Origin: Mobula hypostoma | Lineage: Eukaryota | Assembly: GCF_963921235.1 (NCBI RefSeq) | Contig: NC_086106.1 | Coordinates: 20,708,001 to 20,772,000 of the forward strand | Length of the DNA stretch: 64,000 nucleotides | Reading direction: 5' to 3' | Shown: positions 1 to 64,000 of the stretch, in pieces | Layout of the letters: every line of letters starts with the position of its first letter | Position numbering within the stretch: the stretch's first letter is position 1 | Notes under the pieces: model-generated | What the model was told of the DNA's origin: nothing | What the model saw: the letters and a program-made list of their open reading frames with translations, nothing else | Database searches by the model: none | Program-made: the position numbers and the translations under genes

Positions 1-159
1 TCGTCACTTGAAAAACTGGAGACTCAAGTGCAGTACTCGACTGACCATCACAGTTCTTATCGCTTTCCTAACCAATATGATGTATGACAATTATCTAATC
101 AGTTATTCTCCTGATAGGAAAATAAGCGAAGAGCAACATGTTAAAGATTGAGCACCTAC

Positions 160-216
160 TTGGTTCAACGATCAAAGTAGTTGCATTTCCAAGAATAAGC
201 TTAGTTTCCATCGTGT
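160..216 (-). CDS. TCR-type (alpha/delta-like) J segment, copy 1
   Basis: Minus strand reads TMETKLILGNATTLIVEP, a variant of the K-L-I-F-G-x-G-T-x-L-x-V-E-P J motif (F>L, G>A). It ends in a phase-1 donor CCA A|gtaggt and lies about 300 bp downstream of a 12/23 D segment. Confidence 0.8.
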
Positions 217-244
217 TACAGTTATATCTTGTTATAAAATCTTT
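217..244 (-). other. Degenerate short-spacer (12-type) RSS of J copy 1
   Basis: On + it reads tacagtt (217-223), then atatcttgtt(at), then ataaaatct/aaaatcttt. Spacer is 10-12 nt depending on nonamer register; the heptamer lacks the canonical CAC. Confidence 0.5.
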
Positions 245-478
245 CGGGATTCCCTCCACATTCCCCGGTAGCTGGCTGTCTTGTCTTCCAATGATATAGC
301 CGGTCAGGAAAGCACGATTGCTTCTACTAGTGAGCGACCCATGTAATAGGAAAAAACTTCGATATTCGGTGGTTGATAAAGAACAGAAAATGGTCATTAA
401 ACGCAGCGGAAATTTCCTGGCTGCCAATGCCGCTTGATAGTAACCGATCTGCCGTCAGGACGAGGTCTGCGGCTGAGA

Positions 479-554
479 AGCTAATGTTTGGTCGCGGATG
501 GCATTTCAGATTCTGTGTCTACCACACACTGTGTTATACGGCAATACAAAAAAC
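479..554 (-). other. D segment D2 (TGTGGTAGA, 518-526) with 5' 12-RSS and 3' 23-RSS
   Basis: On +: agctaatgt-23 nt-ttctgtg [tctaccaca] cactgtg-ttatacggcaat (12)-acaaaaaac. The 12/23 layout is the TCR delta/beta D type. Confidence 0.8.
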
Positions 555-857
555 TTTTTCCTCCATGTTACCCGCAGGGACACTTGAGGAAATGCCCCAC
601 CGCACAGCAGATTTGAAGAGAGAGAGAGAGAAAAATAACTTAACGAAGCGTATCACAGAACTGTGAAGACAGTTGATCAGTGATAGGAACAGCTTCTCTC
701 CAACGGAATAATCGTCAGAATTCACAAAACAGGCTACATGCATTCATCAGAGAACAGTGCAGAACGAGCACAAGGATAATAGAAAAAACATAAGATTTCC
801 GCATCTGAGCAGCATTTGAAACTAACCAGTGGGGATGTCAATGTATTGCAACTCGGA

Positions 858-937
858 GGTTAATGTGCGGCAGCTGATGGCATTTCATATACTGTGTGTA
901 TCGTAGTCCCACAGTGAAAGAAGTCAATACAAAAATC
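858..937 (-). other. D segment D1 (GGACTACGATACA, 897-909) with 5' 12-RSS and 3' 23-RSS
   Basis: On +: ggttaatgt-23 nt-tactgtg [tgtatcgtagtcc] cacagtg-aaagaagtcaat (12)-acaaaaatc. The 12-RSS is near consensus. Confidence 0.88.
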
Positions 938-1044
938 TTTCTCTCAGTCACTTGACCATACACATAACGCTTTCAATGCAGTAACCACGTCCGGAAGAGC
1001 TTCATGTGAGTGTTACAGAATGAAATAAAAACTCTATAAACAAC

Positions 1045-1365
1045 AGTGCCAGTAGACGCCCAGAATCGGTGTCACTGACAAGATATTTAAGAAGGTCCGG
1101 CATCGAATTGCTGTAGGCATCACTGCGCTTCATGAATGCTCCAATATTCATCGTCGATTCAGCCCCCATTTCTGAAAACTTTTCGATTCATTAAATGTCC
1201 GGTGAGTTAACGAATTCAGCCCTGGATACCTAATTGCCTACTAAACCCTTGTAATCGAATGGGACAACAGATTTACAAAATCTACAATGTTCCCGGTAAT
1301 GGAATTTCTGATAATTCCAATCCTGCAAATCGGAGCCCGAACTTCGACTCGATTTCGAGAATATC
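1045..1365 (-). pseudogene. Degenerate TCR-like V exon immediately upstream of D1, copy 1
   Basis: Acceptor ctttgacag|G followed by about 320 nt. The 3' end reads LNILSVTP-(ED)SGVYW, resembling FR3 LxIxSVTPEDSxVYYC, with frameshifts and stops. No intact RSS. Confidence 0.4.
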
Positions 1366-2129
1366 CTGTCAAAGAATAATGCTAGCCTAAGCAGAATACT
1401 GTCTGCCTTAAAATAGTTACTGTTCTTATCTCAAGTGATACTCGTAGATTCATACACAACATCCATTCATTAGTGATTATTCCTCATGAACTAAACAGAA
1501 TAACTACTCACAATAATTCAGACTAACAGATTTATACGATCCTCATCAAATACAGCACCGCTGCGCTATCCTGAATTCAAAGTTTTCTTTGCGGAATGCA
1601 CGATATATTCTACTCCAACGTTCTGCCTCCGAAAGTTTTCCGCGGTTTTCTCCCCTTTTCCCCCATTTCTCGGAAAGTTGAGCTCAGAGCAATCTTGGCT
1701 TACCGTGCATGTCTTCCCTTTCTGCATTTGGTTGTTGGAAGATAATTTTAAATAAGTTTTATTTGTTCGTGTTATTACTCTTTAACTGTAGATATTCACT
1801 CTGCGACTAGAGAATCTTTTTTTGCAGCTTATTTTTTTTTTTAATTTTATTTTTATTTGGATAAGGAGTTCACAATTATCATGTACTTTTTTCACACATA
1901 TAACCTTTTCCATTTTTTATATGTATTAAACTACAATTATTTATACATTCTTAAGTACACATTGAGATGATATAAAAGCTAAATAAACATTTAAATAGAT
2001 AATTATGTACTGTGGTAAATCTATCGGGCCTGTCACCCCACTTCTGATTGTCTCTGAAATCTTGCCATCGTGTTCACTTCCACTACTTCTCTTAAATTTC
2101 CAGTCCCTTTCCACTCTCCACATTTCTAA

Positions 2130-4560
2130 TGTCTCGTGTAACAATTTTGGTATCCTTCCTTTAATTATAAATCTATGTGACCGAAGATATCACAGTTTCA
2201 CCTTGGCATGAAAACGCTGACTACCTTCCCTATCATTCTCCCTCATTTCACGTATTCTACCAGGTTGGCCATCAGCCTCCAGTACTTAAGATAAAAACAA
2301 TCTTAGTTTGTCTAAATTCCCACCATACACTCCAATTCAGATAACATACCGGTGACCTTTTCTGCGCCATATCAAAAGCCTATCATCCTGCCTAAAATGT
2401 GACGACGAGACGATAACGACTCACAATATTCAAAATGCGCTCCAGGCACGATTTTATATATAAGGGCATAATATAAGAGCAGAATTCAGCCATTTGGCGC
2501 AAGTAGTCTGCTTCGCCATTTTATTATGGCTGATCCAATTATCCTCTGAGCGCCAATCTGCTGCCTTCTCCCCATATCACTTCATGCCCTGACCAATCAA
2601 GAATCTATCAATCTCTGCCTTAAATATACTTAAATATGATTTTGCCTCCACAGCTGCCTGTGCCAAATAATTCTGCAGATTCACCACTGTATGGCTGAAA
2701 GAAATTCCTTATCATCTCCATTTCAAAAGGATGGCCCTTTATTCTGACGCTGTGTACTCTGATTTTGGACTCTCCCAACAGAGGAAACATCGTCTTCACA
2801 ACGATTCACCATTCACCATTCGACAGGTTTCAATAAGGCCACCCCTCATCCTTCTGAATTCTAGTGAATACAGGTCCAGAGCCATCTAAGGGTCTTCACA
2901 TGGAAAGCGATTCCATTCTGGAATAATTTCCGCCAGTTGCCTTTGATTCCTCTTCAGTTTCAGCAGATCCTTTGGAAGATAAGGGGCTGAAGCCTGCTCA
3001 CAATGCTCTACGAGTGGCCTCACCAGTGATATATAACGTTTCAATATTATATCCTTGCTTTTATATTCTGGTGCTCTTGAAATGAATGCCAACATAATAT
3101 TTGCCTTCCTGACTACAGAATCAACCTGCAAATTAAAAGTTAAGGAATCCTGCACAGGGAATCACAAGTCCCATTGCAACTCATTGGTTTGTATTTCCTT
3201 TACATTTAGAAAATAGAGAATCATTTATTTTCTTCTACCAAAGTGCATGAACATACAGTTCCTAACAATATATTCCATCTGCCATTTCATCGCCAATTAT
3301 TTTAATCTGTTTAATTCCTTCTTCAGCCCCTCTAGTTTCTCAAACTACATGTTCCTGCAAATCATTGACATATACATGTCACGTAAAATGAAGCGGTTCT
3401 AAGTCAGATGCCCGTGGAACATCATTAAACGCCGGCAAGTGGCAAGTAGCCAGAAAAGGCTCACTTTGTTCCCACTCTTTCATATATGCTGGAATCTTTC
3501 TTTTTTTTTTTGTAATACCATAGGCCCCTAGTTTGTTCAGCAGCCTCATGTACGGCATATTGTCAAAGGTCTTCCGAAAATTCAAGTTCACAACATCAGA
3601 TGATTCTTTTTGTCTCTCCTGCTTGATAATTCTTCAAATACTTTCAGAAGATTTGTCAGGTAAGATTTACCCTTTCACGAAGCCATGCTGGCAAAGACTT
3701 ATTTTATCATGTGCCTCCAAGTATACTGAGACTTCATCCTTAATAATTGAATCCAACATCTTCCGAACCACTGTGGTCAGACTAACGAGCCTATCGGTTA
3801 CTTCATCTTCTTCTCTCCCTTCTCGAAGCCATTTGAATATTTCCCGTCTTCCGGTACAATTCCGGAATCTAATGATTCGTGAAAGACCATTGCTAATGTC
3901 TCCACAACCTCTGCAGCAACCTCCTTCAGAACCCTGGGGTGTAAGCCATCTGGTCCAAATAATCTATCTACCTTTAGACCTTTCAGCTTCCCAAGAGCAT
4001 TCTCTCTAGTTATGGTAACTTCACACATTTCCTGCTCCCTGAAACCTGGAACTTCCACCATACTGCTAGTGCTTTCCACAGCGAAGACTAATGCAAAATG
4101 ATTCATCAGTTTTTCCGCAATTTTTTTTGTTTCCAATTACTACCTTTCCAGCATTGCTTTCCTGTGGTCCTATATCCACTCTTGCCTCTGTATTACGCAA
4201 TACTTACCTGTAGAAACGTATCCTCTTTCATATTATTGGCGTGCGTACATTCGTATTCCATTTTTATCTGCTTAGTGACTTTTTAGTTGTTTTCTGCTGG
4301 TATTTGGAAGCTTTACAATCCTGTGACTTCCCACTTTTTTTTTGTTTTATTGCATGCCTCTACTTGACTTTATGTTGGCTTTGACTTCTCTTGTTAGTTA
4401 GAGTTGTGTCATCTTTCCTTTAGAACATCTCTTCCTCTTTGGGATGTACATATCCTCTGCCTTCCGAATTGCTTTTAGAAATTCCAGCCTCGGCTGCTCT
4501 ACCGTTTTCCCTGCCAGTGTTATTTTCCAATCAAATATCATCAACATTACTTGCCAGCAT
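2130..4560 (-). mobile_element. Degenerate CR1 LINE (ORF2 RT fragments)
   Basis: ORFs 2886-3155 (VVRKANIMLAFISR...LVRPLVEHC) and 3798-4136 (GPDGLHPRVLKEVAAE) are CR1 ORF2 motifs. Boundaries are approximate. Confidence 0.85.
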
Positions 4561-5049
4561 TTATACACAATTGCATGCACGATAACTGGCTATATATTGT
4601 TGGCGTCTTTTGGCACATTTCTTCCCAGAGACGAAAACGTAGCCATAGGGCCTGGAGGTGTTGCGTGCCTTAATGAATGGTGGGCCGTGTGGTATGACTT
4701 TTGGAAGGGTCACTCATGCCAAACAGGTCAAAGGGTAGAGGCCACATTGAGAGTAGTCTGCCGGTCCTCTAGGTTTGCTGACTCTGATCAGCACAAACAA
4801 TCAGTACTAGCAAAAAAAAAAAAAAAAAAATCACCACCATGACGTTATACACTGCTGAAGTACTTGCTTGGCTCGGAAAGGCCCTGGGATGTTCTGGAGT
4901 TATAGAAGTCAATGAAAATAAAATTGGTTTCATCAAAGTAATTTCAGTAAATTAAAAAAAAATAGAAACAGCGGAGTTGCCATTAATCAGACTAATAGAG
5001 TTTGGTGGAAGTCCACTGATTTGAAACATGAACTCTTTTCTTCACCCCA

Positions 5050-5357
5050 CAGATGTTCTCTGAGATTCTCATTGTTGGCAGTGCAGAAAGAACAATAATA
5101 TTAGTCGGCGAAGTTTTCAGCTAGATATCTCTTACATCCCGTGCCCAGTAGGTGTTAAGTATGATTCTGTCTGGATCAGTTTTCCTCTGGGTCTTACAAA
5201 GCCACTCATCAAATTGACAGCAGGCTTCTGGGGTGAAGAGTAGAGCTGGAGCATGGTAGATCTGTCGAGTACTGCTGTGGTCGAAGGTGGGATTGGAGAT
5301 CGGTGGACTACATGGCTGCTTGTGTGGAGAGGAGAACTGGAGCTGGGTGCGGCAACA
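5050..5357 (-). pseudogene. Degenerate Ig C1-set (CH2-like) exon, copy 1
   Basis: Paralog at 58250-58562 reads ...PAPALLSTQ...SAELTCSSSPLHPGNLLSV*W...HYC, a C1-like Cys/Trp/Cys pattern with many stops. It lies directly 3' of a CH1-like exon. Confidence 0.4.
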
Positions 5358-5483
5358 CACAGTAAATTTGTAATGAAAAAAAAAACACGGTTGTTTGTAG
5401 AAAATTATCGATGGTGAATCAGCAGGTGGGGTGAAAATCGGTCTGAGTTTAGTCTGTATTGTAATAAATTGACAGAACAGCGG

Positions 5484-7420: not shown

Positions 7421-7459
7421 GGTTTTTGTCCAGGTGCAGTCGCAGTCTCTCTCACCGTG
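7421..7459 (-). other. 23-bp-spacer RSS of the VH gene
   Basis: Minus strand: CACGGTG-agagagactgcgactgcacctgg (23)-ACAAAAACC, with a consensus nonamer. Confidence 0.95.
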
Positions 7460-7755
7460 TATCGCACAGTAATATGTGCCTGTGTCGCGCAGTGTCAGGT
7501 CGTTCATTTGCAGATAAAAACTGCCTCTGTCCTTGGAAGCGGTGAACCGTCTCTCGATTTCAGGCGCGTAATACTTATTACTTTCACTATAATAACGTAC
7601 CAACGTTTCCAGCCCTTTCCCGGAGGCCTGTTTCACCAAGTACGTGTGGAGGTTGTTGATATTGACACCACTGACTTCACAGGACAGTCTGTGCGACTCT
7701 CCGAGCTTTACGACGGCTGAGTCGAGTTGCTTCAGCTGGATGTCGGACCGCACGT
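7460..7755 (-). CDS. IGHV: IgH-type V exon (shark IgW/IgM-like VH), open frame, conserved Trp residues replaced
   Basis: Acceptor tttatttcttgccag|AC. Reads DIQLKQLDSAVVKLGESHRLSCEVSG...VKQASGKGLETLVRYYSESNKYYAPEIERRFTASKD...LQMNDLTLRDTGTYYCA. Both Cys are present, and YYAPxIxxRFTASKD is typical of elasmobranch VH. Confidence 0.95.
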
Positions 7756-7864
7756 CTGGCAAGAAATAAAGAGCAGCGATTAATGAAATGACCCGGAGGC
7801 ATAGGCTCCAAAGGCTTAGAAAAGCCGGCTACCCCGGTGGTGCGTCGGGCCGCGGGACACATAC

Positions 7865-7910
7865 CTGCAAGACAGAACAAGAGGAGACAGATATAAAGAA
7901 CGACACCCAT
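7865..7910 (-). CDS. IGHV: Leader exon of the VH gene
   Basis: ATG GGT GTC GTT CTT...CTT GCA G|gtatgt encodes MGVVLYICLLLFCLA, a hydrophobic signal peptide. A 109-nt GT-AG intron (7756-7864) joins it in frame to the V exon. Confidence 0.93.
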
Positions 7911-8264
7911 CGTTCTGAGCACTGAGTCGGACTTAAACACTTTTGAGATCGGTGCTTCAGCTCAGGCTGGATTTAACGCGAATCGAAGTGAGCGCTGATT
8001 AAATAGATACACTGACTGCGAGTGAGAGAGGATGTCGCAGCATGAACACGTTCTCAGCAACTGAAACCAAAGAGGCAGCTTCCTGTTCCCTCCCCCGGCA
8101 GAGATTTCAATTCCCCAAAAGATGTTCGCCTGTGTACAGGACACGGGTTATCGGCAGTGACCAGAAAAGGATTGAAGATCTGTCGCTCTCTGTTCAAATG
8201 ATCAACTTGAGCATGGGAGAATTTATTTAAACTGAAACACGAAGAATGCCAGCGGTAAAGAAAT

Positions 8265-21879: not shown

Positions 21880-22284
21880 TTAATTCAAACTCAACAGGGT
21901 GCTGGGGTGAAGAAGGTAATAGGCGATGTCTGGTTCAGCAGCTTGCTCGAGTTGAGAGGTGATTGGAGCTGGGCCTGTTAATTCAGAAGAAACTTGCAAA
22001 CTGTTAAGGCTTGAATAATTGTATAAAATGATAGATGGTGAATCAGCAGATCTGCGAGATGCGGTTTGGTATTTGTCCGTATTGAAGCAAGTAAATAGGA
22101 CATGGCATAGTATGATAAACAGGTGGTTAATTTTATGTATCTCTCGGGATCTGGGCATTGCCGGTAGTCAGAATAAATTAGACATCTGAGCTGCATTTGG
22201 GGCCACCTACATTGATGGCACATGAGACATAATATGCTGTAATGGTAACAGTGAGAAATCTCCTTCATTGAGGTACCACTGAAC
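21880..22284 (-). pseudogene. Degenerate IgH CH1-like exon plus the truncated start of the next exon
   Basis: Strong acceptor ttttattctagttacttcag|GT. Reads GSVVP...VSC...LTTGNAQIPRDT*N*PPVY...QIC*FTIYH. It lies about 4 kb 3' of a JH and is paralogous to 5230-5483 and to 58440-58732 plus 61884-62040. Confidence 0.5.
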
Positions 22285-23009
22285 CTGAAGTAACTAGAAT
22301 AAAAATACAAATTGTAACGATGCTGGAAATCAGACTGCAGATCTAAATCCTTTGCAGATTATTATTAACTGAGTAAAAAACTACTGCTTTGTTGTGGTGG
22401 TATCCTTGGACTGTATCCATCTCTCTGCACTATTCATCTGTCTTTTTGTACTGCCCTGATCTCCATCTCTCTGAATCCACCCTTATTTTGTATCGATTGG
22501 GTCACTGTGCCACTGTGTCCTGAACAATATTTTTCCTTCAGTAACATCACCAGAACCGACCGTCTGATCGTTATTCCTTGAGATTGGAGGATTTGTTGTG
22601 TGAGAATGGCTCTACATTTCCTACTCTACAACAGGGCTGTCCTTTGTAACCACGCTATTACCTGTGAGGTACACAGGACACCGAGAAGGTGCTCTGTAAA
22701 TGTCGTGACTGTATGTAGCAACCACTTTTTGCTGAATCACCGGTGAATACTTCACTCCAAATCCCCGGTTTCCTTGAGCTAAATAAGTCGAAGGAATAAT
22801 CACTCCGGTCCCAACAAAACCATGGTTTTGAGACGGCTGTCCTACTCTAGTCCCCGGTATGTGTGGATGCGTGTAATTTACCAACCTGTTACAACTGAGA
22901 GCCAAAAAACAAAACAAAAAAAAAATACAAAAAAAAACAGCACACTGCATACGATTACAGGGATTATATTTATGAATATGTAAGCGACAGGTATTCTGCA
23001 GATGCTGTA

Positions 23010-23985
23010 AATTTAAGCAACGCACATCAAAGTTGCTGGTTAACGCAGCAGGCCAGGCAACATCTCTAGGAAGAGGTGCAGTCGACGTTTCAGGCCGAGA
23101 CCCTTCGTCAGGACTAACTGAAGGCAAAGTGAGTAAGAGATTTGAAATTGGGAGGGGGAGGGGGAGATCCAAAATGATAGGAGAAGACAGGAGGGGGAGG
23201 GATTGATCCAGGAGCTGTACAGGTGATAGGCAAAGGGGATACGAGAGGATCATGGGACAGAAGGTCCGGGAAGAGAGACAAGGGGGGCGGGGTGATCCCA
23301 GAAGATGGGGAAGGGGGAAATTCAGAGGGACAGAGAGAGAAAAAGGAGAGTGAGAGAAAGAATGTGTGTATAAAAATAAGTAACAGATGGGGTACGAGGG
23401 GGAGGCGGAGCATTAGCGGAAGTTAGAGAAGTCGATGTTCATGCCATCAGGTTGGAGGCTACCCAGACGGAATATAAGGTGTTGTTCCTCCAAACTGAGT
23501 GTGGCTTAATCTTTACAGTAGAGGAGGCCGTGGATAGACATGTCAGAATGGGAATGGGATGTGGAATTAAAATGTCTGGCCACTGGGAGATCCTGCTTTC
23601 TCTGTCGGGCAGAGCGTAGGTGACGAGAGAAGCGGCGAGAGGCACTTATCCGTGTAAGCGGAATAAGTGCTACACATGGCCTTACACTTCCTCTCCTACC
23701 ACCATTCAGGGCCCTAAACAGTCCTTCCAGGTGAGGCGACACTTGACCTGTGAGTCGGCTGGGGTGATATACCGCGTCCGGTGCTCCCGATGTGGCCTTT
23801 TTTATATTGGCGACACCCGACGCAGACTGGGAGACCGCTTTGCTGAACACCTACGCTCTGTCCTCCAGAGAAAGCAGCATCTCCCAGTACCAACACGTTT
23901 TAATTCCACATCCCATTCCCATTCTGAAATGTCTATCCACGGCATCCTCTACTGTAAAGATGAAGCCACACTCAGAGTTCTCAGA
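23010..23985. mobile_element. Two Penelope-like GIY-YIG end fragments in inverted orientation
   Basis: Minus 23010-23615 and plus 23620-23985. ORF 23620-24042 has VIYRVRCSRCGLFYIGDTRRRLGDRFAEH. Confidence 0.88.
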
Positions 23986-24585
23986 TTTTCTCAGATTTAC
24001 ATGATTTTCTCAGATTTACATGACAAATACCAGTTACATTGAATGAAACTGAGCAGAGAGTGAGACCAATCTTCCGATATCGTTGTGCTTCATTTGAACA
24101 CACCCAATAAACTCAGAGGTCTATCTACCCTTCCTTGTATCCTTACAAAACGCCTGTACACTCTTGCTGGCCATCCCACCCCCCCCCGCCCCTCACCCCG
24201 ATTCTCTACATTCACTAGTGGAACACACGATCATTCAGGCAGGATGTTCCAGGTCACAACCATTCATCAACAAACGTTCCCTTAAATGCTCCCCATTACA
24301 CGTATTTGACTTGAAAGCTCTCTGCCTACAGTACCTTCACTACCATTCTCACCCCACTCAAGAATTCAAGGCTCTCTGGAATATATGAAGGAAAGGTGCC
24401 TTAATTACCGTTTTATTTTTCCTGCAAATTCCCCACAGTCTTCCAATCTCGAAAATCGCTCCTTACGTATCCAACATCCTTTCCCATCAGCGAATAAAAC
24501 TAATACCTTAATCCCATCAATTAACCCTGGATATCTTTTGCTGTATCCTACGACAGCCCTCATGCTGAATGCTATATCATGGGAC

Positions 24586-26013: not shown

Positions 26014-26546
26014 GCGACTGATACCACCTGTACCCTGGGGATATTAAACCTCCAACTATTCCTTCACCTTATGTCTTAATCCCATTACCTTCAATGTGAA
26101 GTCTGCCGACAGCAAACCTTCATTCCAAAATTTTGGCACTGAACAAATCCATTGTTATCACTGACAGGACAAGTTCAACTACGCTGAAACTCCCAGTCCC
26201 TGAACGTGGCTTCAGTTACCGTTGAGTATCAGAAGTCAGACATGAACTAATAATGACCTCAGTCAGCACAATCAGCTGCTGTCAAGGCACGGTTTGGTGA
26301 CGTAATCCGACATGTTCCCCTGCAGTCTGTTCCCTGTCTATGGACGGTTCACTAGTGGAATGGGGTAACCGTATATTGTTATTAGGTACAGTCTGGCTCT
26401 TAGAGAAACCTGCCTTTTCGGGGAGATTTGTGTACTTACTTTAAGTATCTCACTGATGTCAAGTGAATCATTGAATACGCCAAAACCGTAAATTCGTAAA
26501 ATAATAAAAAAAAAGAACGAGAATGGAACTCAGAAGCTGGTTTCAC

Positions 26547-26633
26547 TTGGAGTCACTGTCAACGAGCTTTATTCGCCCTAGTAAGCAAGATAGTCACAGT
26601 GCCCAGTGTCCCCACTCGCTCAATGCAATAATT
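26547..26633 (-). pseudogene. IGHJ: IgH J pseudogene with 23-RSS (J 26547-26594)
   Basis: Minus strand: aattattgc-23-CACTGTG, then YLAY*GE*SSLTVTP and |gtgaaa. Matches the YFDYWGxGTxVTVTS pattern with W>TAG and G>TAA. Confidence 0.8.
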
Positions 26634-27639: not shown

Positions 27640-27960
27640 CCTTTCGGAAATTTTCTCGCTCCAAAATAGACGTTTACCTTTGCAATCCGAATCAGGTTTC
27701 ATGGAGATGACTGTGGAAAGCAGCAAAGCGATTTCGTGGATGCAGACTGGGCCGCAGACCCTGATTTGTCAGGAACAGCTTCTGGTCATCTCCTTACCGC
27801 CATGGTTCATATCACGGTACTTCACCGAAGATCACAAACTGCCTTCATTACATCGAACCACAAATCAGGTGGATCTCAAAGACGGCCAACCGGCTCATTA
27901 ACCTTCCCTCTCTTTGTGGGTGTTTCACACAGTAGGACTCAATCTCCGCCATCCCAGTGT
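27640..27960 (-). pseudogene. Highly degenerate VH pseudogene
   Basis: Nucleotide paralog of the VH pseudogene at 63737-64000. The 3' end reads NLIRIAKVNVYFGAR (cf. ..EDTAVYFCAR). It lies about 1 kb upstream of JH 26547. Confidence 0.45.
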
Positions 27961-40500: not shown

Positions 40501-41370
40501 AGAGTAGGTATCCGCGAGTTGTCGCTGTGCCTCGGCAAGGTACAGGTCAGTACGCCGGACTACAACAGCACCCCCCTTATCGGCCGGTTTAATAATAAGG
40601 TTAGGATTAGTGTGGAGGGGGTGGAGAGCAGAGCGTTCCGAAGGAGTGAGGTTGGAATGGGGACAAGGTGCGGTGAAGTCGAGACGGTTGATGTCCCGTC
40701 GGTAGTTTGCGATAAAGAGATCCAGAGCAGGCAGAAGACCAGAGCGGGGTGTCCACGAAGAAGAGGAGGGTTGAAGACGGGAGAAGGGATAATCGGTGGG
40801 GGTGGAAGAGTCCTTGCCGAAGAAGTAGGCTCGGAGACGGAGACGGCGGAAGAAAAGTTCTGCATCATGTCGAACACTGAACTCGCTGAGGTGTGGGCGA
40901 AGGGGGACAAAGGTAAGGCCCTTACTGAGGTCAGAGCGTTGTGCCGCCGACAGTTGAAGGTCGGAGGGGATGATAAGGACCCGGCATGGATGAGAGCTGG
41001 GCTTAGAGGGGGGATCCACCTCAGTGGATCGTTTTTCCAAATTGGTCCACTTAGTTCCCCTTCCCAAGGTGCCCTCTGTCAAGGAGACTGCGAACCTGGT
41101 GATTCAGCTCGTTTTTCGTATTAACGGTCCCCCCTTTGAAGTGGTATCTGATAGAGGTTCGCAATTTACCTCCCTGTTTTGGAGGGCTTCTTGCAAACTT
41201 CTCGGGATCACGGTTAACCTCTCATCTGGGTTTCATCCACAGAGTAATGGCCAGACCGAGCGGGCTAATCAGCAGATCGAGGTGATGCTCCGTTGTGTGA
41301 CATCCCAGGAATCTTCCTCTTGGAGTCAGCAACTTCCCTGGGTCGAGTACGCCATTAATTCTTTGGCATA
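34548..41370 (+). mobile_element. 3'-truncated Gypsy/Ty3 LTR retrotransposon (5' LTR 34548-35073, gag, pro, RT, RNase H, integrase), frameshifted
   Basis: LTR tgtt...gaca. RT region has [35 protein letters not shown]. Integrase has GHPG-like ECHPGIRRT, RPWSHIALD and DRFSKLVH...SDRGSQFTS...[10 protein letters not shown]. No 3' LTR. Confidence 0.95.
38395..41017 (-). mobile_element. Penelope-like element (RT plus GIY-YIG) nested in the Gypsy integrase
   Basis: 622-aa ORF 39214-41082 (FYLLPKIHK, MDVQSLYTSIPH, AMGT, FLRYIDD) and GIY-YIG in ORF 38787-39686. Imperfect 10-bp TSD accttagtgg/acctcagtgg splits TAVLTLV|DRFSK. Confidence 0.95.
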
Positions 41371-46149: not shown

Positions 46150-48200
46150 TATTCTAATCAAATAAGACGAGAATTCATAAAAAGAAAAGGATAGCGCTCA
46201 ATCGCTGGGAACGACCTCGAGGGTAGTAATCTCAGGGTTACTTCCACCGTTACGGGATATGAGGGAAAGTGGGAGTATATGGCAGATAAATGCATGTTTG
46301 AAGAAGAAAGAGCCTAGGAAGCACAAATAGTTTGATCTATCGGGACTCCTTATGAAGCGTAGAGCGTGTGTGGATCAGTACATGAATGTTAGTTTACACC
46401 TGCAACAATCCGACAGACAGATTTTCTACTGCTAGCTTTAACCAAGATTTATACGTGGTCGACATCAAGCAAGAGAGAGGGAAATGTGAGGCTGGAGGTG
46501 CTGTAGAAGTCAATGACAACAAGTTCAATAGAAACGTCAGGCAGAATAATCAAATGGAGAAAGTAACGCCTACTGGGATAGATTGTATTTAGTCCAATAC
46601 AAATGGTGTGCTAAGTAAGAAATGTAAACTTAGTTCTTGCATAATTACATGCGACTGGTATATTATAGCCATTGCAGAAATATGGCTAAGGGAGGGATAT
46701 GACTTCCGATTAACCTTTCCAGAATCCCGATGATTTAGGCAGGAGGAGAAAAGAAAAGTGCGGGCGATGGCATTGTGATTAACGGGGATGTCCCAGTAAT
46801 AGGCAGCAATGAAATTATTGATCGAGTATCCATTGAGCATTTCTGAATAGAGCTGAGAAATAAGATAGAAGCGATCGCATTATGGACTTGTACTGTAGGT
46901 CTCTAAATGGTCAATGGAAATTAGAAGAGCAAATTTCCGAAGTTGTGAAGAATTGCAAGAATAATATGTTGTCGCAGTCGGGGTTTTAAACCTCGATGTC
47001 AGCCTGGGTCTGCCAAAATGTTACGGTCTTAATCTGGATATAATTTGTTAAGTACTTTGAGGGATTGTTAACTTGGGAAAAGTACAGAGTACCTTACAAG
47101 GAAGAGTGCAAACCTTGACTTGCTCTGAGGTAGTGGTGTCGGAATGGTGACTGATGTATCAGTGCGGGAGCACTTTGGGACCAGTGACCATAGGTCTATT
47201 AGTTTTAACATAGCAATATAAGTCACAGAACCGATCCACACTTTCAACTTTTAAATTGGAGTAAGGCGAATTTGGACGCCAGAGATATGTGCTTGCAGAT
47301 ATTGATTGGAGTAATGATGGAAGCAGTTTGGTGGCGTGCAAAAGGACCACAGAATGTAGAAGGCCTTTAAAATGAGTTATTGACAGATCAAGTATCCATG
47401 TTCCTGTAGTAGTGAAGTACAAGAATGGTAAGGGGTAGATAACCTGTATGATGAGAGATATTGATGCTTTGGCGAGGAAAAAGGAGGAAACGTTGTTCAG
47501 GTAGGTGTAGCTGAGTTCGAGTGATTAGCTGGAAAAAATATAGGGGACGCCTTAATATAGTGAATTAGCAATAATCAGTGCGAAATGAGACAGGAGATAG
47601 CGTTGGTAGTGGAACTTCAGGAGATCGCAAAGCAAATTTAGGTCTATTGAACGCATAACAAGACTAAAAAGAGGGAGAGTAGAGCTCCTCGAAGAGGAAT
47701 GGAGGTATATTTACATGCAGCTGTTGTAAATATACAAGGACCTAAATAAGTATTTATTTTCGAATTTTACCGCACAGAAAGAGCCTGTATTACAGTAGAA
47801 GAGAATCTCTAGGTCTCAGAATCTATGCAGGCAGTTAGAATACCAGGGCCTGACAAGGAACATATATCTAAGCGTACCGCAGGAGTCTGGAGAAAAAAAT
47901 TGCTGGAGCCCTACGTGAGATACTTTCATTACCATTATCAGCATTACGGTGCCGGATGGCAAACTCTGCACTTTATTTATTGTGGTTTTCAAAGGAAAAT
48001 AATGGAACTACAGAAAAGCGAATCTAACGTATGTTTTAAGTAAGTTAATGTGAGGACTCGGGGGGATCCTGATGCAACCTGAAGACATAATGAAGCACTA
48101 TTCAATAGTAAATGACACAACGGGTTTAAAGATAACTCACTTACTTGGCACAGTTGAAAGCTGAGTAACGGCTCCAAATATCAGCTTCCTTCTCCGGAGT
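46150..48200 (+). mobile_element. Old degenerate CR1 LINE (endonuclease to RT)
   Basis: Endonuclease start (..IAIAEIWL-like, about 46660-46700) and later CR1 ORF2 remnants. Boundaries are approximate. Confidence 0.75.
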
Positions 48201-48430: not shown

Positions 48431-48510
48431 CTTGCAGACACGTCTGGCATCGTAGTACCAGTGCCAAATGTGGTCTTAACAGTCGTGTCAAAGTAAATCA
48501 TACAAAAACT
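48431..48510 (-). pseudogene. J-like remnant with FGTGT motif
   Basis: Minus strand reads VKTTFGTGTTMPDVSA, preceded by nonamer agtttttgt. The heptamer/spacer register is disrupted and the donor is weak. Confidence 0.45.
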
Positions 48511-49635: not shown

Positions 49636-50329
49636 GCAGTCGAAGGCTGATTTCCCTGCTGTAGACGACTAAGACTTGATAACTCTGTCCATAGTCATTC
49701 ACTCCTAGTGTGGGCAAATGGTGCACGGGCCACGGTTTGAAAGGCGCCTGAGTAGGAAACGGAGTTGCTTTTGATATTGCTGGGACTGCTGTTGCTGTTC
49801 ACTAGAAATTGTTGGCCGAACATATTTCTGTAGTGTTGTAGGAATATGGGAGGAAACCTGAAAGTACCATCAATTGTGAAATTTGACATTGAATTTCAGA
49901 GCAATGACGTATAATGAATTGCTCTGCACTGTTGTTGACAGTGCCCTTCACACAACCTTGTTGCGATTATTGATTTCAACATTCACGATGTGGCATTCAC
50001 ACTACCACTCCCATCCACCTTGACCAAGTCAGCAGATGCATGTAAAATAACACAATTGAATATAATATACTTTTACTCACTCGGTTGTACGGTCAATTGA
50101 ATCCTATCATATAATATTTTCTGTGGATACACCACATTAACCCACCAATTAAAAGCCTACACCAAGATACCAAAAGGTCTCATTATAGCAACTATCTCCT
50201 TAGTAGTATACCCTAAGTAGTTTCTCCAATACCACACCACAGGTTCCTTCGTTCTTTGAAGAAATACAGCTTACAAATGCCTATTTTTCATCGTAAGAAA
50301 TTCTACAAAGTGAACAATTCTTTTAATAC

Positions 50330-51237: not shown

Positions 51238-51309
51238 TTGTTCAACGATCAGAGTAGTTGCATTTCCAAGAATAAGCTTAGTTTCCATCGTGTTACAGTT
51301 ACAAAATCT
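51238..51309 (-). pseudogene. TCR-type J copy 2 (J 51238-51293), RSS spacer deleted
   Basis: TMETKLILGNATTLIVEQ|gtaagt. One C is lost relative to copy 1, so the donor phase changes. Heptamer tacagtt abuts nonamer acaaaatct with no spacer. Confidence 0.8.
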
Positions 51310-51546: not shown

Positions 51547-51622
51547 AGTTAATGTTTGGTCGCGAATGGCATTTCAGATTCTGTGTCTACCACACACTGT
51601 GTTATACGGCAATACAAAAAAC
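51547..51622 (-). other. D2 copy 2 (TGTGGTAGA) with 12/23 RSS
   Basis: On +: agttaatgt-23-ttctgtg [tctaccaca] cactgtg-12-acaaaaaac. Confidence 0.8.
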
Positions 51623-51922: not shown

Positions 51923-52002
51923 GGTTAATGTACGGCAGCTGATGGCATTTCAATTCCTGTGCATATCGTAGTACCACAGTGAAACAAGTCAATACAAAAA
52001 TC
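51923..52002 (-). other. D1 copy 2 (GTACTACGATATG) with 12/23 RSS
   Basis: On +: ggttaatgt-23-tcctgtg [catatcgtagtac] cacagtg-aaacaagtcaat-acaaaaatc. Confidence 0.85.
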
Positions 52003-58732: not shown

Positions 58733-61700
58733 CTAGCAGGCCTGAACTTCAGATTGCGGCCTCTGCCATTGATCTCGGCGGCTCCACCACCTCAGGGCAT
58801 ATTCAAAACCCGGACTCGAGCAACGACCATGGACACCTTCACAGCGATTGCGCAACCACCAACTGCGACTCCAGCCTTGAACTCCAGGCCGGGTCTTTAT
58901 GTGCTGCTATTGTGACTCCCGTCTCCCCTTCCTCCACCACCACTCTGCAACCCCGTATCCCTCAGATCCCACCGTCAACTCCTGGGCCCTTAGAGGTTCC
59001 ATCTTCCTCTCACCCCAACCCTCCCTTCTCCATTGACACCCCCAGCCTCCCCCCTCCCTCCTCTGATCCCAGCTCTCAAGATTTCAGCCTTGAAATCGAG
59101 GCCGGGTCTTTATGTGCTGCTGTTGTGACTCCCGTCTCCCCTTCCCCCACCAATACTCTGCAATCCCGTCTCCCTCAGATCCCACCGTCAACTTTTGGGC
59201 CCTCGGAGGCTCCATCTTCCTCTCACCCCAACCCTCCCCTCTCCATTGACACACCCAGCCTCCCCCCTCCCCCCTCTGATCACAGCTCTTATCCGTGCCG
59301 GGTCTTTACCATCCCCTCCGACCTTCAACTGTCGGAAGCAGAACGCTCGGTTCTCAGTAAGGCCCTCACGTTTGTCCCCCTTTGCCCACACCTCAGCGAG
59401 TTCCGTGATCGCCATGATGCGGAACTTTTCAGCCGCCGTCTCCGTCTCCGAGCCTACTTCTTCGGCAAGGACTCTTCCACCCCCACCGATGACCCCTTCT
59501 TCCGTCTTCAACCCTTCTAATCTTCATGGACACCCCGCTCTGGTCTTCTGCCTGCTCTGGATCTCTTTATCGCTAATTGCCGACGGGACATCAACCGTCT
59601 CGACTTCAACGCACCTTGTCCCCATTCCAACATCACTCCTTCGGAACGCTCTGCTCTCCACTCCCTCTGCACTACTCCTAACCTTATTATTAAACCCGCC
59701 GATAATGGGGGTGCTGTTGTAGTCTGGCGTACTGAACTCTACCTTGCCGAGGCACAGCGACAACTCGCGGATACCTACTCTTATTTACCCCTCGATCGTG
59801 ACCCTACTAAGGAGCACCAGGTCATTGTTTCCCACACCATCACCGACTTTATCCGCTCAGGAAATCTCCCATCCACTGCTACCAACCTTTTAGCTCCCAC
59901 ACCCTGCACTTCCCGTTTCTACCTCCTACCCAAGATCCACAAACCTGCCTCTCCTGGCCGACCTATTGTCTCAGCTTGCACCTGCCCCACCGAACTCATT
60001 TCTGCATACCTCGACACTGTTTTATCACGCCTTGTTCAATCCCTTCCGACCTATGTTCGTGACACTTCTCATGCTCTTAAACTTTTCGATGATTTTAAGT
60101 TCCCTGGCCCCCACCGCTTTATTTTCACCATGGATGTCCAGTCCTTATATACTTCCATCCCCCATCAGGAAGGTCTTAAAGCTCTACGCTTCTTTTTGGA
60201 TTCCAGACCTAATCAGTTCCCCTCTACCACCACTCTGCTCCGTCTAGCGGAATTAGTCCTTACTCTTAATAATTTCTCCTTTGGCTCCTCCCACTTCCTC
60301 CAAACTAAAGGTGTACCTATGGGCACCCGTATGGGTCCTAGCTATGCCTGCCTTTTGTTGGGTTTGTGGAACAATCTATGTTCCGTGCCTATTCTGGTAT
60401 CTGTCCCTCACTTTTCCTTCGCTACATCGATGACTGCATTGGTGCTGCTTCCTGCACGCATGCAGAACTCGACTTTATTAACTTTGCCTCCAACTTTCAC
60501 CCTGCCCTCAAGTTTACCTGGTTCATTTCCGACACCTCCCTCCCCTTTCTAGATTTTTCTGTCTCTGTCTCTGGAGACAGCTTATCCACTGATGTCTACT
60601 ATAAGCCTAATGACTCTCACAGCTATCTGGACTATTCCTCTTCTCACCCTGTCGCTTGCAAAAATGCCATCCCCTTCTCGCAATTCCTCCTTCTCCGCCG
60701 CATCTGCTGTCAGGATGAGGCTTTTCATCCTAGGACGAAGGAGATGTCTTCCTTTTTTTAAAAAAAGGGGCTTCCCTTCCTCCACTATCAACTCTGCTCT
60801 TAATCGCATCTCCCCATTTCACGTACATCTGCTCTCACTCCATCCTCCCGCCACCCCACTAGGAATAGGGTTCCCCTGGTCCTCACCTACCACCCCACCA
60901 GCCTCCGGGTCCAACATATTATTCTCCGTAACTTCTGCCACTTCCAACGGGATCCCACCACTAAGCACATCTTTCCCTCCGCTCCTGTCTCTGCATTCCG
61001 CAGGGATCGCTCCCTACCCAACTCCCTTGTCCATTCGTCCCCCCCATCCCTCCCCACTGATCTCCCTCCTGGCACTTATCCGTGTAAGCGGAACAAGTGC
61101 TACACTTCCTCCCTTACCACCATTCAGGGACCCAAACAGTCCTTCCAGGTGAGGTAACACTTCACCTGTGAGTCGACTGGGGTGATATACTGCGTCCGGT
61201 GCTCCTGATGTGTCCTTTTATATATAGGCGAGACCCGACGTAGACTGGGAGACCGCTTTGCTGAACATCTACGCTCTGTCCGCCAGAGAAAGCAGGATCT
61301 CCCAGTGGCCACACATTTTAATTCCACATCCCATTCCCATTCTGACATGTCCATCCACGGCCTCCTCTACTGTAAAGATGAAGCCACACTCAGGTTGGAG
61401 GAACAACACCTTATATTCCGTCTGGGTAGCCTCCAACCTGATGGTATCAACATCGACTTCTCTAACTTCCGCTAAGGCCCCACCTCCCTCTCGTACCCCA
61501 TATGTTACTCATTTTTACGCACACATTCTTTCTCTCAGTCTCCTTTTTCTCCCTATATCCCTCTGAATATACCTCTTGCCCATCCTCTGGGTCCCCCCCC
61601 CCCTTTGTCTTTCTTCCCGGACCTTCTGTCCCATGATCGTCTCGTATCCCCTTTTGCCAATCACCTGTCCAGCTCTTGGCTCCATCCCTCCCCCTCCTGT

Positions 61701-61870
61701 CTTCTCCTATCATTTTGGATCTCCCCCTCCCCCTCCAACTTTCAAATCCCTTACCTACTCTTCCTTCAGTTAGTCCTGACGAAGGGTCTCGGCCTGAAAC
61801 GTCGACTGCACCTCTTTCTTCAGATGCTGCCTGGCCTGCTGCGTTTACCAGCAACTTTGATGTGTGTTAC
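58733..61870 (+). mobile_element. Penelope-like element with perfect 13-bp TSD taatattatttat
   Basis: RT (MDVQSLYTSIPHQEG, LRYIDD) and GIY-YIG remnants with frameshifts. TSD at 58720-58732 and 61871-61883. A duplicated block of about 190 bp lies near the 5' end. Confidence 0.95.
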
Positions 61871-61883
61871 TAATATTATTTAT

Positions 61884-62045
61884 ACATCATTTGGAATCTG
61901 ACCATTGCTGGTAATGCATTTGTGTTCCATTCAGACGGTATTTGGAGACAAACAAACTGATGGTTCAGGAGTCATCAAAACGCTCGAAGGGTAAGTTTGA
62001 GAAAACTCCTTCCTTTTCAGACTTCAGTAAAAGTGATTCTGCATC
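61884..62045 (-). pseudogene. 5' half of a CH1-like exon, copy 2
   Basis: Acceptor gatgcag|AA. Reads ..FDDS*TISLFVSKY..QW, colinear with 22130-22284. Confidence 0.4.
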
Positions 62046-63034
62046 ATTTCTAATGACTCGTTTTTTAAGAAAATACACATTATTACGATGGTGTATATCT
62101 GACAACAGATCCAAATCCTTTGCAGATCATTACTAAATAAATTAAAAATTGACAGTTTCGTTGGGGTGGTATCCGTGGAATGTTCATCCTTCTCTCTCCG
62201 CTACTCATCTATTTTCATGTACTGTCTCGTTTCCCATCTCTCTGAATCCAACCTTGTGTCTGTCCATTGGAAAACTGTGTCAATGAGGTCCTTGCCCAAT
62301 ATTTCTCCTTCAGTAACATCAAAAGTGTAAATGTTATCACTTTATGTCAAAACCACTTTTACTGAATCACCAGTAACACTGTTAATGTGGGAAAGCACTT
62401 GTTAAGCAAACCCAGGCGGGACTGAAGGAGGGCAACAAATTAGAGAGGCTAATCCTGGGATATCGGCTATACGATTGCTGTATGCTGGTAGAGACCGTAC
62501 ATGACGGGACTGACACGCACTGGTGCCCTGGGGATATTGAACCATCGACCATTCTCTCAGAATATGTCTTAACCCAATCATCTTCAACGTGAAATCAGCA
62601 GAAAGTAACCCCCGATACCAATAACTTGACAGAGAAAAAAAAAATCATTGCTGTCACTGACATGGAACACGTTAAAATGCAATGAATCGCTTTGCCGCTG
62701 ACGGTAGATTTAGTTGGTGCCGATTATCATAACCCAACTTTCAGTCAAACAGTGAACTCACTCATCTAAATCGTCTGGTGTCAAGGCACAGTCTGGTGAC
62801 AAGATCCCACCCCATTCCCGTGCAGTTTGTTCCCTGTCTGTGGACAGTTCACTGTTGGGGTAGGAGAGGTCGCGCTGTACTGTTACTGGGCTCTAGAGAA
62901 ATCCAGCTAGTTTATGGAGGTTCATTTACTTGTTCTAAATATATCACTGATTTCAGTTGATTCACTGCATTCGCCAACACCGAGAATTAATAAAATACAA
63001 ACGGGTGAGGATAGAATTCAGAAGTTGGATTTAC

Positions 63035-63121
63035 CTGAAGTCACTATCAACGTGGCTCATTCGCTCCGTTTGGCCAGATATTCACTCCTCTGGGTGTCGT
63101 CACTTAGCCAATGCAATAACT
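63035..63121 (-). pseudogene. IGHJ: IgH J pseudogene with 23-RSS (J 63035-63082)
   Basis: agttattgc-23-aggagtg, then YLAKRSE*ATLIVTS and G|gtaaat. 48 nt long, the same as its paralog at 26547. Confidence 0.78.
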
Positions 63122-63696
63122 GCACTTGCCTGTCTCTGTCAAGAGGTTCGGAAACGGTCCAATTGCCGAGTGAGTGACACTGAAGCCGATCTATAGTTCA
63201 CATACGTTAATGCGAACAGTGTTAAAGGGGAAGGAAACCAATAAACGCTAGGCCAAACTGGACCGTTAATTAAAACTCTCAAATGAAAAACGAAGCATAA
63301 TGTGCGACTGAAAAGACAACTGACAATAAATAAATACCGCTAGTCTTCAGAGTCAGTTGACTGCACAGTCCAATTTTTCAGGCAAGGCAGAATGCTTCGG
63401 ACGTTCTGTGTCCAAGTCTTAACAAGTACTACGACGAAATTTATGGAGTTAAATTCAATCAGAATGAAAAAAAAAAGCTGACACATGCATATTCACGAGT
63501 GCAATTACCGAATCTGCTGCGCTGCCGAATACGTGGTTTTGACAGTCACATCCAATTAGTTCAACACCTGTCAAATTGATCCCTGTCCGAACCGGAAATA
63601 ACAGCATCCTCGATTTTCATCCCAAACTCTGAGCTTGGCTCTTCCTGGCGTGTGGATTAAAGAGGCATCTTCAGAGTTTTCCTGTCGGAGGTCACC

Positions 63697-64000
63697 GGTT
63701 TCTGTCAACACACAGAAACAGAGTCTAACCATTATGAACTTTTAATTGCCCAGCATAGCAGTCCAGTCAGGCTTCTGTGATTTGGCTCTGGTAAGCAACA
63801 GAGCGGAAGTCATGTACACTGACTGTGCTGCTGATTTGTCGGGACCAGTTTCTGTTCAGCTCCCCAAAGTCGTTATCCATATCATCGAACATTGCCATAG
63901 CTCACAAACCGCCTTTAACCCATCGGGTCTGAAATCAGTTGAATCCTCGAGTCAGACAGCGGACTTCGGAATGCTCCTCACCCTCACTTCTGTGCCCCGG
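63697..64000 (-). pseudogene. VH pseudogene (runs off the window) with a 23-type RSS
   Basis: GEEHSEVRCLTRGFN*FQTRWVK... resembles VH FR1/CDR1/FR2. The 3' RSS is cataatg-24 nt-acagaaacc. Confidence 0.55.

What the first reader, a model, noticed from the sequence alone, without database searches (positions are those of the whole stretch)
1..64000. Tandemly repeated Ig/TCR hybrid unit of about 51 kb: IgH pseudo-clusters interleaved with TCR-type D-D-J cassettes
Seen: the D-D-J cassette occurs twice (160-937 and 51238-52002), each lying 3' of IgH remnants. At 63.0-64 kb, VH and JH precede CH-like exons at 58.3-62.0 kb, with an equivalent set at 21.9-28 kb. Established: TCR loci are normally single translocons, while shark IgH is multi-cluster. 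Inference: a TCR delta-like D-J core has been amplified cluster-style together with IgH clusters, a hybrid organisation that may be undescribed for batoids.
Basis: partly seen in the sequence, partly recalled or inferred. Interest (0 to 1): 0.8.

Follow-up and report, generated by a model that had tools for sequence, protein, structure and literature searches.

The report
Duplicated relic TCR-delta D-J cassettes
In a ray's single T-cell-receptor alpha/delta locus, a block of about 51-57 kb has been duplicated in tandem, carrying antibody-type V genes and a decayed copy of the receptor's D-D-J core; the V gene is still used but the J copies are dead, so this is a duplicated relic, not a new cluster-style receptor.

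Summary
The duplication is real. The D-D-J cassette lies on the minus strand at 160-937 and 51238-52002 (about 90% identical). At least six copies span 460 kb of the same chromosome. Both D segments have the TCR layout (12-RSS, D, 23-RSS).

The window is not a cluster-type receptor. All J copies here (J1, J2, J3) have lost their heptamer, their FGXG motif or their frame. The coding lesions of J1 and J2 are shared by both copies, so an already dead cassette was duplicated.

The only matching C exon in the genome is single-copy. It lies about 335 kb downstream, behind the proximal cassette and a run of intact J segments. This is one translocon.

The "CH-like exons" at 58.3-62 kb are a retroelement; no C-domain was found. 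Decayed JH relics (26.55 and 63.05 kb) and an intact antibody-type V gene (7421-7910) are real and derive from IgW clusters. The second V lies just outside the window.

RNA contigs show the V gene spliced and ending exactly at its RSS, which indicates a rearranged transcript. Whether the relic D segments are still used is open.

The scan noted a related arrangement earlier on other DNA of this genome (s1-141760).

The parts
160..217 (-). J1 relic of copy c1 (TCR-delta-type J). It reads ...ETKLILGNATTLIVEP followed by a GT donor. The heptamer is lost through a 4-bp deletion, leaving TACAGTT with a 10-bp spacer.
479..554 (-). D2 of copy c1. 5' 12-RSS at 527-554, 9-nt core at 518-526, 3' 23-RSS at 479-517 (heptamer CACAGAA).
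858..937 (-). D1 of copy c1. 5' 12-RSS at 910-937, 13-nt core at 897-909, 3' 23-RSS at 858-896 (heptamer CACAGTA).
7421..7954 (-). VH-clan V gene of unit 1. 5'UTR and leader exon end at 7865, the intron is 7756-7864, the V exon is 7460-7755 and the 23-RSS is 7421-7459. The reading frame is open, but the conserved Trp41 codon is TTG (Leu). It is transcribed and spliced.
21880..28370 (-). C-less IgH (IgW-type) cluster remnant. J-C intron piece at 21880-22700, JH relic at 26547-26594, V-J spacer at 27467-28365. Retroelement fragments interrupt it at 23.0-24.0 kb.
28461..28556 (+). Inverted fragment of a VH gene, the 3' part (FR3, ...YYCA).
38388..41014 (-). Retroelement with reverse transcriptase and a GIY-YIG-like motif, so probably Penelope-like. 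It is a 92% identical inverted copy of 59268-61873.
48145..48190 (-). J3 relic of copy c2. The heptamer is destroyed (..CCG) and the motif reads FGAV.
48439..48482 (-). Extra J-like relic. The FGTG motif is kept, but there is no recognisable heptamer or canonical donor. Its counterpart in the proximal core reads FGSS.
50080..50118 (-). J2 relic of copy c2. FGGG is replaced by IYDR after a 3-bp deletion. The same lesions are present in c1's J2, which lies just outside the window.
51238..51294 (-). J1 relic of copy c2. It has the same LGNA motif as c1, the RSS spacer is deleted, and a 1-bp deletion precedes the donor.
51547..51622 (-). D2 of copy c2 with its 12-RSS and 23-RSS, nearly identical to c1.
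51923..52002 (-). D1 of copy c2 with its 12-RSS and 23-RSS (3' heptamer CACAGGA).
59268..61873 (+). Retroelement inserted only in unit 2.
61879..64000 (-). C-less IgH cluster remnant of unit 2. J-C intron piece at 61879-62321, JH relic at 63035-63082, dispersed repeat of about 410 bp at 63135-63545, V-J spacer at 63539-63966. Its V gene lies beyond the window's end.
1..5482 (.). Duplicated block of unit 1, collinear with 51079-58697 of unit 2 at 82-88% identity. Unit 2 carries extra insertions.

Best explanation
The window lies in the V-gene region of the single TCR alpha/delta translocon of a ray.

Inferred history: segmental duplications copied a block of about 7 kb from the functional TCR-delta core (D1, D2, J1, J2, J3) into the array of C-less, IgW-cluster-derived V units upstream. 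A later tandem duplication of about 51-57 kb produced the two units seen here.

Shown here: the J copies have lost their recombination signals, motifs or frame. They are passengers, because their coding lesions predate the last duplication.

The V genes are the working parts. The V at 7421-7910 is transcribed from its own leader, and its intron is spliced. In RNA contigs it stops exactly at its recombination signal, as a rearranged V does. With no local J or C, it would have to join the functional J segments and single C exon 305-335 kb downstream; that step is inferred, not shown.

The relic D segments keep canonical 12/23 signals and could still be used as extra D segments. That is not shown.
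For: - Six cassette copies lie on one contig, all in the same orientation.
- The window's copy is collinear over about 6.9 kb with the proximal core at C40:20.3977-20.4046 Mb.
- The proximal core is followed by at least five J segments with intact FGXG motifs and a GT donor, then a C1-set exon, then further J segments.
- That C exon is single-copy in the genome.
- J lesions: J1 has lost its heptamer and reads LGNA, J2 reads IYDR, and J3 has a CCG heptamer and FGAV. The J1 and J2 coding lesions are identical in both copies.
- Other cassette copies carry different lesions such as stops, lost donors and deletions. This indicates independent decay.
- The V gene is intact apart from Trp41 to Leu, and is VH-clan.
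- Its relatives are the V genes of genuine multi-exon IgH clusters, at 79-84% identity.
- RNA-like runs X1 and X2 show joint 7755/7865 (GT..AG on the minus strand). Their contigs end at 7459-7461 with no cover over the RSS or the intron.
- Cassette words are absent from the RNA-like runs and present at 0.92-0.97 in DNA runs of the source sample.
- No constant-domain match was found in the window.
Against: - The partner D, J and C of the V transcript were not seen, because the contigs break at the junction.
- The C exon's identity as TCR-delta rests on its position. It scores only 22.6 bits for C1-set, and its best solved relatives are generic Ig constant domains.
- A second-Gly-to-Ala J motif (FGKA) is functional in salmonid TRDJ (PMC8559430). 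The LGNA motif alone therefore does not prove that J1 is dead; the verdict rests mainly on the broken RSS.
- RNA runs were available only as assembled contigs from unnamed tissues, so absence of J use is weak evidence.
- D-segment RSS blocks are somewhat better conserved than their flanks (83-86% against 75-79%) and are almost free of indels (at most one gapped position per pair). The cassettes may therefore not be wholly inert.
Confidence: 0.75

Rival explanations
1. The cassettes are partly functional. The relic D1 and D2 segments serve as additional, V-proximal TCR-delta D segments. A V joins a nearby relic D, whose 23-RSS then joins a functional J 300 kb downstream. Only the J parts are dead. 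This extends the best explanation rather than replacing it.
For: - All eight D heptamers in c1 and c2, and the four in the 20.866 Mb copy, keep the CAC next to the coding end, and spacers are exactly 12 and 23 bp.
- D-RSS blocks are 83-86% identical between old copies against 75-79% for flanks, with 0-1 gapped positions against 37-82.
- The J RSSs in the same copies have decayed.
- The 12/23 rule allows V(23) to D(12) and D(23) to J(12).
Against: - The conservation excess is weak (p 0.01-0.09 per pair, and the pairs are not independent).
- No transcript with a relic D core was seen or could be searched for.
- Two other copies have lost a D.
Confidence: 0.25
2. One reading: a functional, cluster-style TCR-delta-like receptor. 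Each unit of about 51 kb would be a self-contained V-D-D-J(-C) cluster, comparable to shark IgH clusters or marsupial TCR-mu.
For: The V has a 23-RSS and lies 6.5 kb upstream of 12/23 D segments and a J, in the same orientation, and this arrangement is repeated at least four times.
Against: - There is no C exon in the window or near the other copies, and the C exon is single-copy.
- All local J segments are inactivated.
- No supporting leaderless V lies downstream of the J segments.
- The cassette is absent from the RNA-like runs.
Confidence: 0.04
3. Assembly artefact: one unit falsely duplicated, for example two haplotypes placed in tandem.
For: None beyond the general risk in repeat-rich immune loci.
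Against: - The copies differ by 9-16%, with copy-specific retroelement insertions and deletions.
- Further copies exist at 75% identity.
- DNA runs of the source sample hold 92-97% of copy c1's own words.
- RNA contigs match copy c1's V with no mismatch across sites where c2 differs.
Confidence: 0.02

Closest known systems
IgH-like V genes inside TCR alpha/delta loci used by TCR delta (VH-delta of amphibians, birds, monotremes and coelacanth; TAILV of nurse shark)
   Same: A VH-clan V gene with leader, intron and 23-RSS sits in the TCR-delta V region upstream of 12/23 D segments. It is transcribed, spliced and apparently rearranged. IgH-TCR alpha/delta linkage and TAILV are published for elasmobranchs including a stingray (PMC12227049).
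   Different: Here the V units still carry recognisable relics of the IgW cluster they came from, namely a JH relic and part of the J-C intron. They have been co-duplicated with copies of the TCR-delta D-J core. Pairing of the V with the delta constant region was not shown here.
Tandem cluster TCRs built from VH-related V plus TCR-delta-type parts (marsupial and monotreme TCR-mu; shark NAR-TCR cassettes)
   Same: Repeated units place an antibody-related V next to TCR-type D and J segments. NAR-TCR cassettes are noted elsewhere on this chromosome by the scan.
   Different: The units have no constant exon of their own, no leaderless supporting V behind the J, and their J segments are dead. They do not work as clusters.
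Elasmobranch IgW heavy-chain miniclusters (V-D-D-J-C)
   Same: The V, V-J spacer, JH and start of the J-C intron are 71-84% identical to clusters at C40:18.4-19.7 Mb that carry 5-7 C1-set exons.
   Different: There are no CH exons. The JH has stops and a lost Trp. In unit 1 the V's own D-J region is deleted.
Expansion of TRA/TRD V regions by segmental duplication, as in the bovine and sheep loci
   Same: Tandem duplication of multi-gene blocks inside the V region, followed by pseudogenisation and transposon insertion.
   Different: The duplicated block includes a copy of the D-J core itself. I did not find that described in the papers I could search.

Membership tests
TCR-delta-type D gene segment | Short core flanked by a 5' RSS with 12-bp spacer and a 3' RSS with 23-bp spacer | tested here: met
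   D1 and D2 of both copies have heptamers that keep CAC at the coding end, spacers of exactly 12 and 23 bp, and T-rich or A-rich nonamers.
Functional TCR J gene segment | 12-RSS with an intact heptamer next to the coding end | tested here: not met
   J1 in c1 has a 4-bp deletion, leaving TACAGTT with a 10-bp spacer. J1 in c2 has lost its spacer. The J3 heptamer ends in CCG.
Functional TCR J gene segment | FGXG motif, open frame and GT donor in phase | tested here: not met
   J1 reads LGNA, and c2 also has a 1-bp deletion before the donor. J2 reads IYDR. J3 reads FGAV. Caveat: FGKA is tolerated in salmonid TRDJ (PMC8559430).
IgH minicluster (V-D-J-C) | Constant-region (C1-set) exons downstream of J | tested here: not met
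   No C1-set match in ORFs of 58-62.4 kb, 21.9-28.6 kb or 48.3-49.9 kb. The region claimed is a retroelement. The homologous stretch of genuine clusters is intronic.
IgH minicluster (V-D-J-C) | VH gene and JH segment of IgH type | tested here: met
   The V matches antibody VH chains at E down to 1e-51. JH relics align to ...FDF(W)GGGTPLTVNS plus donor, but carry stops.
VH-delta / TAILV | VH-clan V located inside the TRA/TRD locus upstream of the delta D segments, with a 23-RSS | tested here: met
VH-delta / TAILV | Expressed joined to TCR-delta D-J-C | tested here: inconclusive
   The leader intron is spliced and contigs end at the V/RSS boundary in X1, X2 and X3, but the joined partner was not displayed.
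Doubly rearranging cluster TCR (NAR-TCR / TCR-mu) | Leaderless supporting V or own C exon downstream of the cassette's J | tested here: not met
   No V or C domain lies between J of c2 (51.2 kb) and the next V (7.9 kb), apart from an inverted VH fragment.
Tandem segmental duplication | Collinear homologous blocks in the same orientation at a constant offset, diverged beyond allelic level | tested here: met
   Offsets are 51,080 bp (cassette), 57,058 bp (V) and 56,920 bp (second remnant). Identity is 82-91%.

The most novel reading that the evidence does not exclude
The relic D segments are in active use. Each antibody-type V would then have a private pair of TCR-delta D segments a few kb downstream, which then join the shared J-C 300 kb away. 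That would be a living intermediate between cluster and translocon organisation. It would also be a natural model for how hybrid receptors such as TCR-mu or NAR-TCR were assembled.
Probability: 0.2. Interest if true: 0.6.

Novelty: new variant of a known kind. Interest (0 to 1): 0.35.

Why it matters
How antibody and T-cell-receptor genes exchanged parts, and how cluster-type loci became translocons, are old questions in the evolution of adaptive immunity.

This ray locus shows three things side by side. Antibody (IgW) clusters were stripped of their constant exons and recruited as V genes for TCR delta. The D-J core of the receptor was itself copied into the V array. The copies then decayed unevenly: V alive, D signals intact, J dead.

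That gives a dated series of intermediates. It also gives a concrete, testable question: whether relic D segments add to TCR-delta diversity. It does not reveal a new kind of receptor.

Tried and rejected
- Regex and RSS scans for JH or VH inside 63-64 kb found no V. Only a decayed JH was found, and only by homology.
Only J relics are there, and Pfam gave no Ig hit.
- A protein search with the V exon against the large protein collection returned nothing.
- tblastn of the delta-position C exon against the window gave only chance hits.
- Two key papers were not held in the library: Deiss 2019 on TAILV and Ott 2021.
I wanted C1-set exons of the IgW clusters to build a local profile, and that failed for the same reason. 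The check for CH relics therefore rests on Pfam scans of open frames, not on a profile search across frameshifts.
- The test for selection on the D RSSs gave only a weak signal.
- The assembly-artefact explanation was rejected on divergence and on read support.
Full report
**Where the window lies.** The window is C40:20,708,001-20,772,000 of a 3.48-Gb, 200-contig assembly. Earlier notes of this scan call the animal a ray.

About 305 kb downstream on the minus strand, at 20,402,864-20,403,695, lies the best-preserved copy of the D-D-J cassette. It is followed by further J segments with intact FGXG motifs and GT donors (...KLIFGGGTQLTVQP...MIFGGGTQLTVVP...KLIFGDGTKLTVEP and others). Next comes an open exon at 20,372,223-20,372,615 that passes Pfam's C1-set cut-off. 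After it come more J segments.

That C exon is single-copy in the whole genome. This is the ordinary order V ... D-J-C(delta) ... J(alpha). The identification of the exon as the delta constant region rests on position, since its solved relatives are generic Ig constant domains.

Genuine IgH clusters lie at 18.4-19.8 Mb on the same contig. Each has a V followed by 5-7 C1-set exons. This fits the published linkage of IgH clusters to TCR alpha/delta in elasmobranchs, a stingray included (PMC12227049).

**The observation.** Self-comparison shows that 1-5482 is collinear with 51079-58697 at 82-88% identity. The second copy has extra insertions.

Both copies of the cassette read on the minus strand. 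D1 and D2 each have a 5' RSS with a 12-bp spacer and a 3' RSS with a 23-bp spacer, the TCR beta/delta layout. The J has a 12-RSS position, a TCR-type sequence and a GT donor.

The duplication extends beyond the window:
- The V unit at 7221-8175 recurs 57,058 bp upstream at 87-89% identity.
- The piece at 21880-22700 recurs 56,920 bp upstream at 84% identity.

Six cassette copies, two of them partial, lie within 460 kb, all in the same orientation.

The three old lineages are the proximal copy, the ancestor of c1 and c2, and the 20.866 Mb copy. They are about equally distant from one another, at 75-79% in substitutions. Copies c1 and c2 are 91% identical. This suggests an old burst of duplication followed by a later tandem duplication.

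An assembly artefact is excluded by three results:
- The copies are too diverged and carry copy-specific retroelement insertions.
- DNA runs of the source sample hold 92-97% of c1's own words.
- RNA contigs match c1's V without a single mismatch across sites where c2 differs.

**What the cassettes are.** Copy c2 is collinear with the proximal delta core over about 6.9 kb (window 48079-52915 against C40:20,397,712-20,404,647, 71-74% identity). The block copied was therefore D1-D2-J1-J2-J3.

In the window every J is damaged:

| J copy | Damage |
|---|---|
| J1, copy c1 | 4 bp missing from the heptamer region, leaving TACAGTT with a 10-bp spacer; motif reads LGNA, not FGNG |
| J1, copy c2 | most of the RSS spacer also missing; one base lost before the donor; same LGNA motif |
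| J2, both copies | reads IYDR in place of FGGG after a 3-bp deletion, with identical sequence in both |
| J3, seen in c2 | heptamer ends in CCG; motif reads FGAV |
| Fourth J-like element (48439-48482) | keeps FGTG but has no heptamer; looks dead in the proximal core too |

The J1 and J2 coding lesions are shared by c1 and c2, so the last duplication copied a cassette that was already dead.

The other copies carry different lesions: stops, a deleted FG, and donors changed to GG or CT. This indicates independent decay after the older burst.

One caution applies. A J with FGKA is the only functional TRDJ of salmonids (PMC8559430). The second-Gly-to-Ala change alone is therefore not lethal, and the verdict on J1 rests mainly on its RSS.

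**The D segments.** The D segments behave differently. All D heptamers in c1, c2 and the 20.866 Mb copy keep CAC at the coding end, and the spacers are exactly 12 and 23 bp.

The RSS blocks are 83-86% identical between old copies against 75-79% for the sequence between them. They have 0-1 gapped positions against 37-82. Per pair the excess is only p = 0.01-0.09, and the pairs are not independent. I treat this as a hint that the D segments may still be used, not as a finding.

**The IgH remnants.** The V at 7421-7910 has these features:
- an ATG leader and a GT..AG intron;
- an open V exon ending ...YYCAI;
- a heptamer, a 23-bp spacer and a perfect nonamer;
- clear membership of the VH clan.

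Its one blemish is Leu (TTG) at the conserved Trp41.

The V of unit 2 lies just outside the window (equivalent 64279-65254). It is open and keeps Trp41. The V next to the 20.866 Mb cassette has a stop.

These three V genes form a clade that is 79-84% identical to V genes of the genuine clusters at 18.9-19.6 Mb. They are only 70-74% identical to the two other VH-like subfamilies that fill 20.41-20.67 Mb.

Downstream of the V positions, two stretches (61879-64000 and 21880-28370) are 71-81% identical to parts of genuine clusters. The matching parts are the V-J spacer, the JH and the first 1-3 kb of the J-C intron. The JH relics at 63035-63082 and 26547-26594 align to ...FDF(W)GGGTPLTVNS plus donor, but carry stops. 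In unit 1 this part is deleted and replaced by repeats.

No constant-domain relic was found:
- 59268-61873 is a retroelement with a reverse-transcriptase hit and a 92% identical inverted copy at 38388-41014.
- None of the open frames tested in 58-62.4 kb, 21.9-28.6 kb or 48.3-49.9 kb matches an Ig constant domain.
- The matching stretch of genuine clusters shows no Ig-like open frame either.

The JH and the equivalence of 21.9-28 kb with 58.4-64 kb are supported.

**Expression.** Three small runs labelled as probable RNA were laid on 2400-8300.
- In X1 (same species label) and X3 (a related label), a contig joins 7755 to 7865, skipping 109 bases with GT..AG ends on the minus strand. This is the leader intron, so these runs hold RNA.
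- In X1 and X2, contigs match the V exon without mismatch and stop at 7459-7461. That is exactly the border between V coding sequence and heptamer.
- Nothing covers the RSS, the intron or the flanks.
- X3 carries 52 further letters beyond the V end that do not match the germline. It also reads TGG (Trp) at the codon that is TTG here.

This is what rearranged V transcripts look like. The joined partner was not displayed, so use with the delta constant region is inferred.

The cassette's own words are absent from the RNA-like runs. That is weak evidence, since a used J would contribute few words.

**Reading.**

Shown:
- one C exon, in a single copy;
- a translocon order of segments;
- a tandem duplication;
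- TCR-type D segments;
- dead J copies, with lesions older than the last duplication;
- IgW-derived V units without C exons;
- a transcribed, spliced V whose transcripts end at the RSS.

Inferred:
- the V genes feed the functional D-J-C 305-335 kb downstream;
- the D-J relics hitch-hiked with V-unit duplications.

Open: whether the relic D segments are used.

**Comparison with what is known.** Antibody-type V genes in TCR alpha/delta loci are known (VH-delta, TAILV), as is IgH-TCR alpha/delta linkage in elasmobranchs (PMC12227049). The scan has already described the proximal array of C-less IgW-type V units in this genome (s1-141760).

The addition here is that copies of the D-J core itself are scattered through the V array and decay asymmetrically. 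In the papers I could search I found no description of this. The two most relevant papers were not available to me.

I file it as a new variant of a known kind, of moderate interest.

Noticed in passing
window 7600-7625 (V exon); L030 and L032: In the V clade of the window, the conserved Trp of the FR2 'GLEW' motif is replaced. This residue contacts the light chain in antibodies. It reads GLETL in c1 and c2 and GPESL in the 20.875 Mb copy, while V genes of genuine IgW clusters keep GLEWL. This may reflect a changed pairing partner.
   Followed up: partly
window 7637-7639: The Trp41 codon of the unit-1 V is TTG (Leu) in this genome. RNA contigs of a related species label (X3) read TGG there, at much higher depth. 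The sister species seems to express an intact version strongly.
   Followed up: partly
L034 (C40:18,934,559-18,938,049) and hits at 18,934,159 / 18,934,769 / 18,935,412 / 18,936,059: In one genuine IgH cluster the V runs on past YYC into D-like sequence without a V heptamer, which looks like a germline-joined VD. Four V-exon-like pieces also sit about 640 bp apart in tandem.
   Followed up: no
L003 (C40:20,401,364-20,405,195), J1 of the proximal cassette: The best-preserved J1, in the presumably functional core, reads FANG rather than FGXG (...ETKLIFANGTTLIVEP). Its heptamer and donor are intact.
   Followed up: no
window 63135-63545: A dispersed repeat of about 410 bp is inserted into the IgH remnant of unit 2. 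Copies 80-82% identical lie on many chromosomes. It is SINE-like.
   Followed up: no
window 58867-59289: The 5' part of the retroelement holds a direct tandem duplication of 210 bp at 91% identity.
   Followed up: no
window 35000-38500: An LTR-retrotransposon-like element has gag/pol-type open frames and an integrase zinc-binding domain (E 5e-18). It lies next to the inverted retroelement copy.
   Followed up: partly
window 150-950: DNA runs of two other species labels hold 18-19% and 6-9% of the cassette's words. Related cassettes therefore probably exist in other batoids.
   Followed up: no
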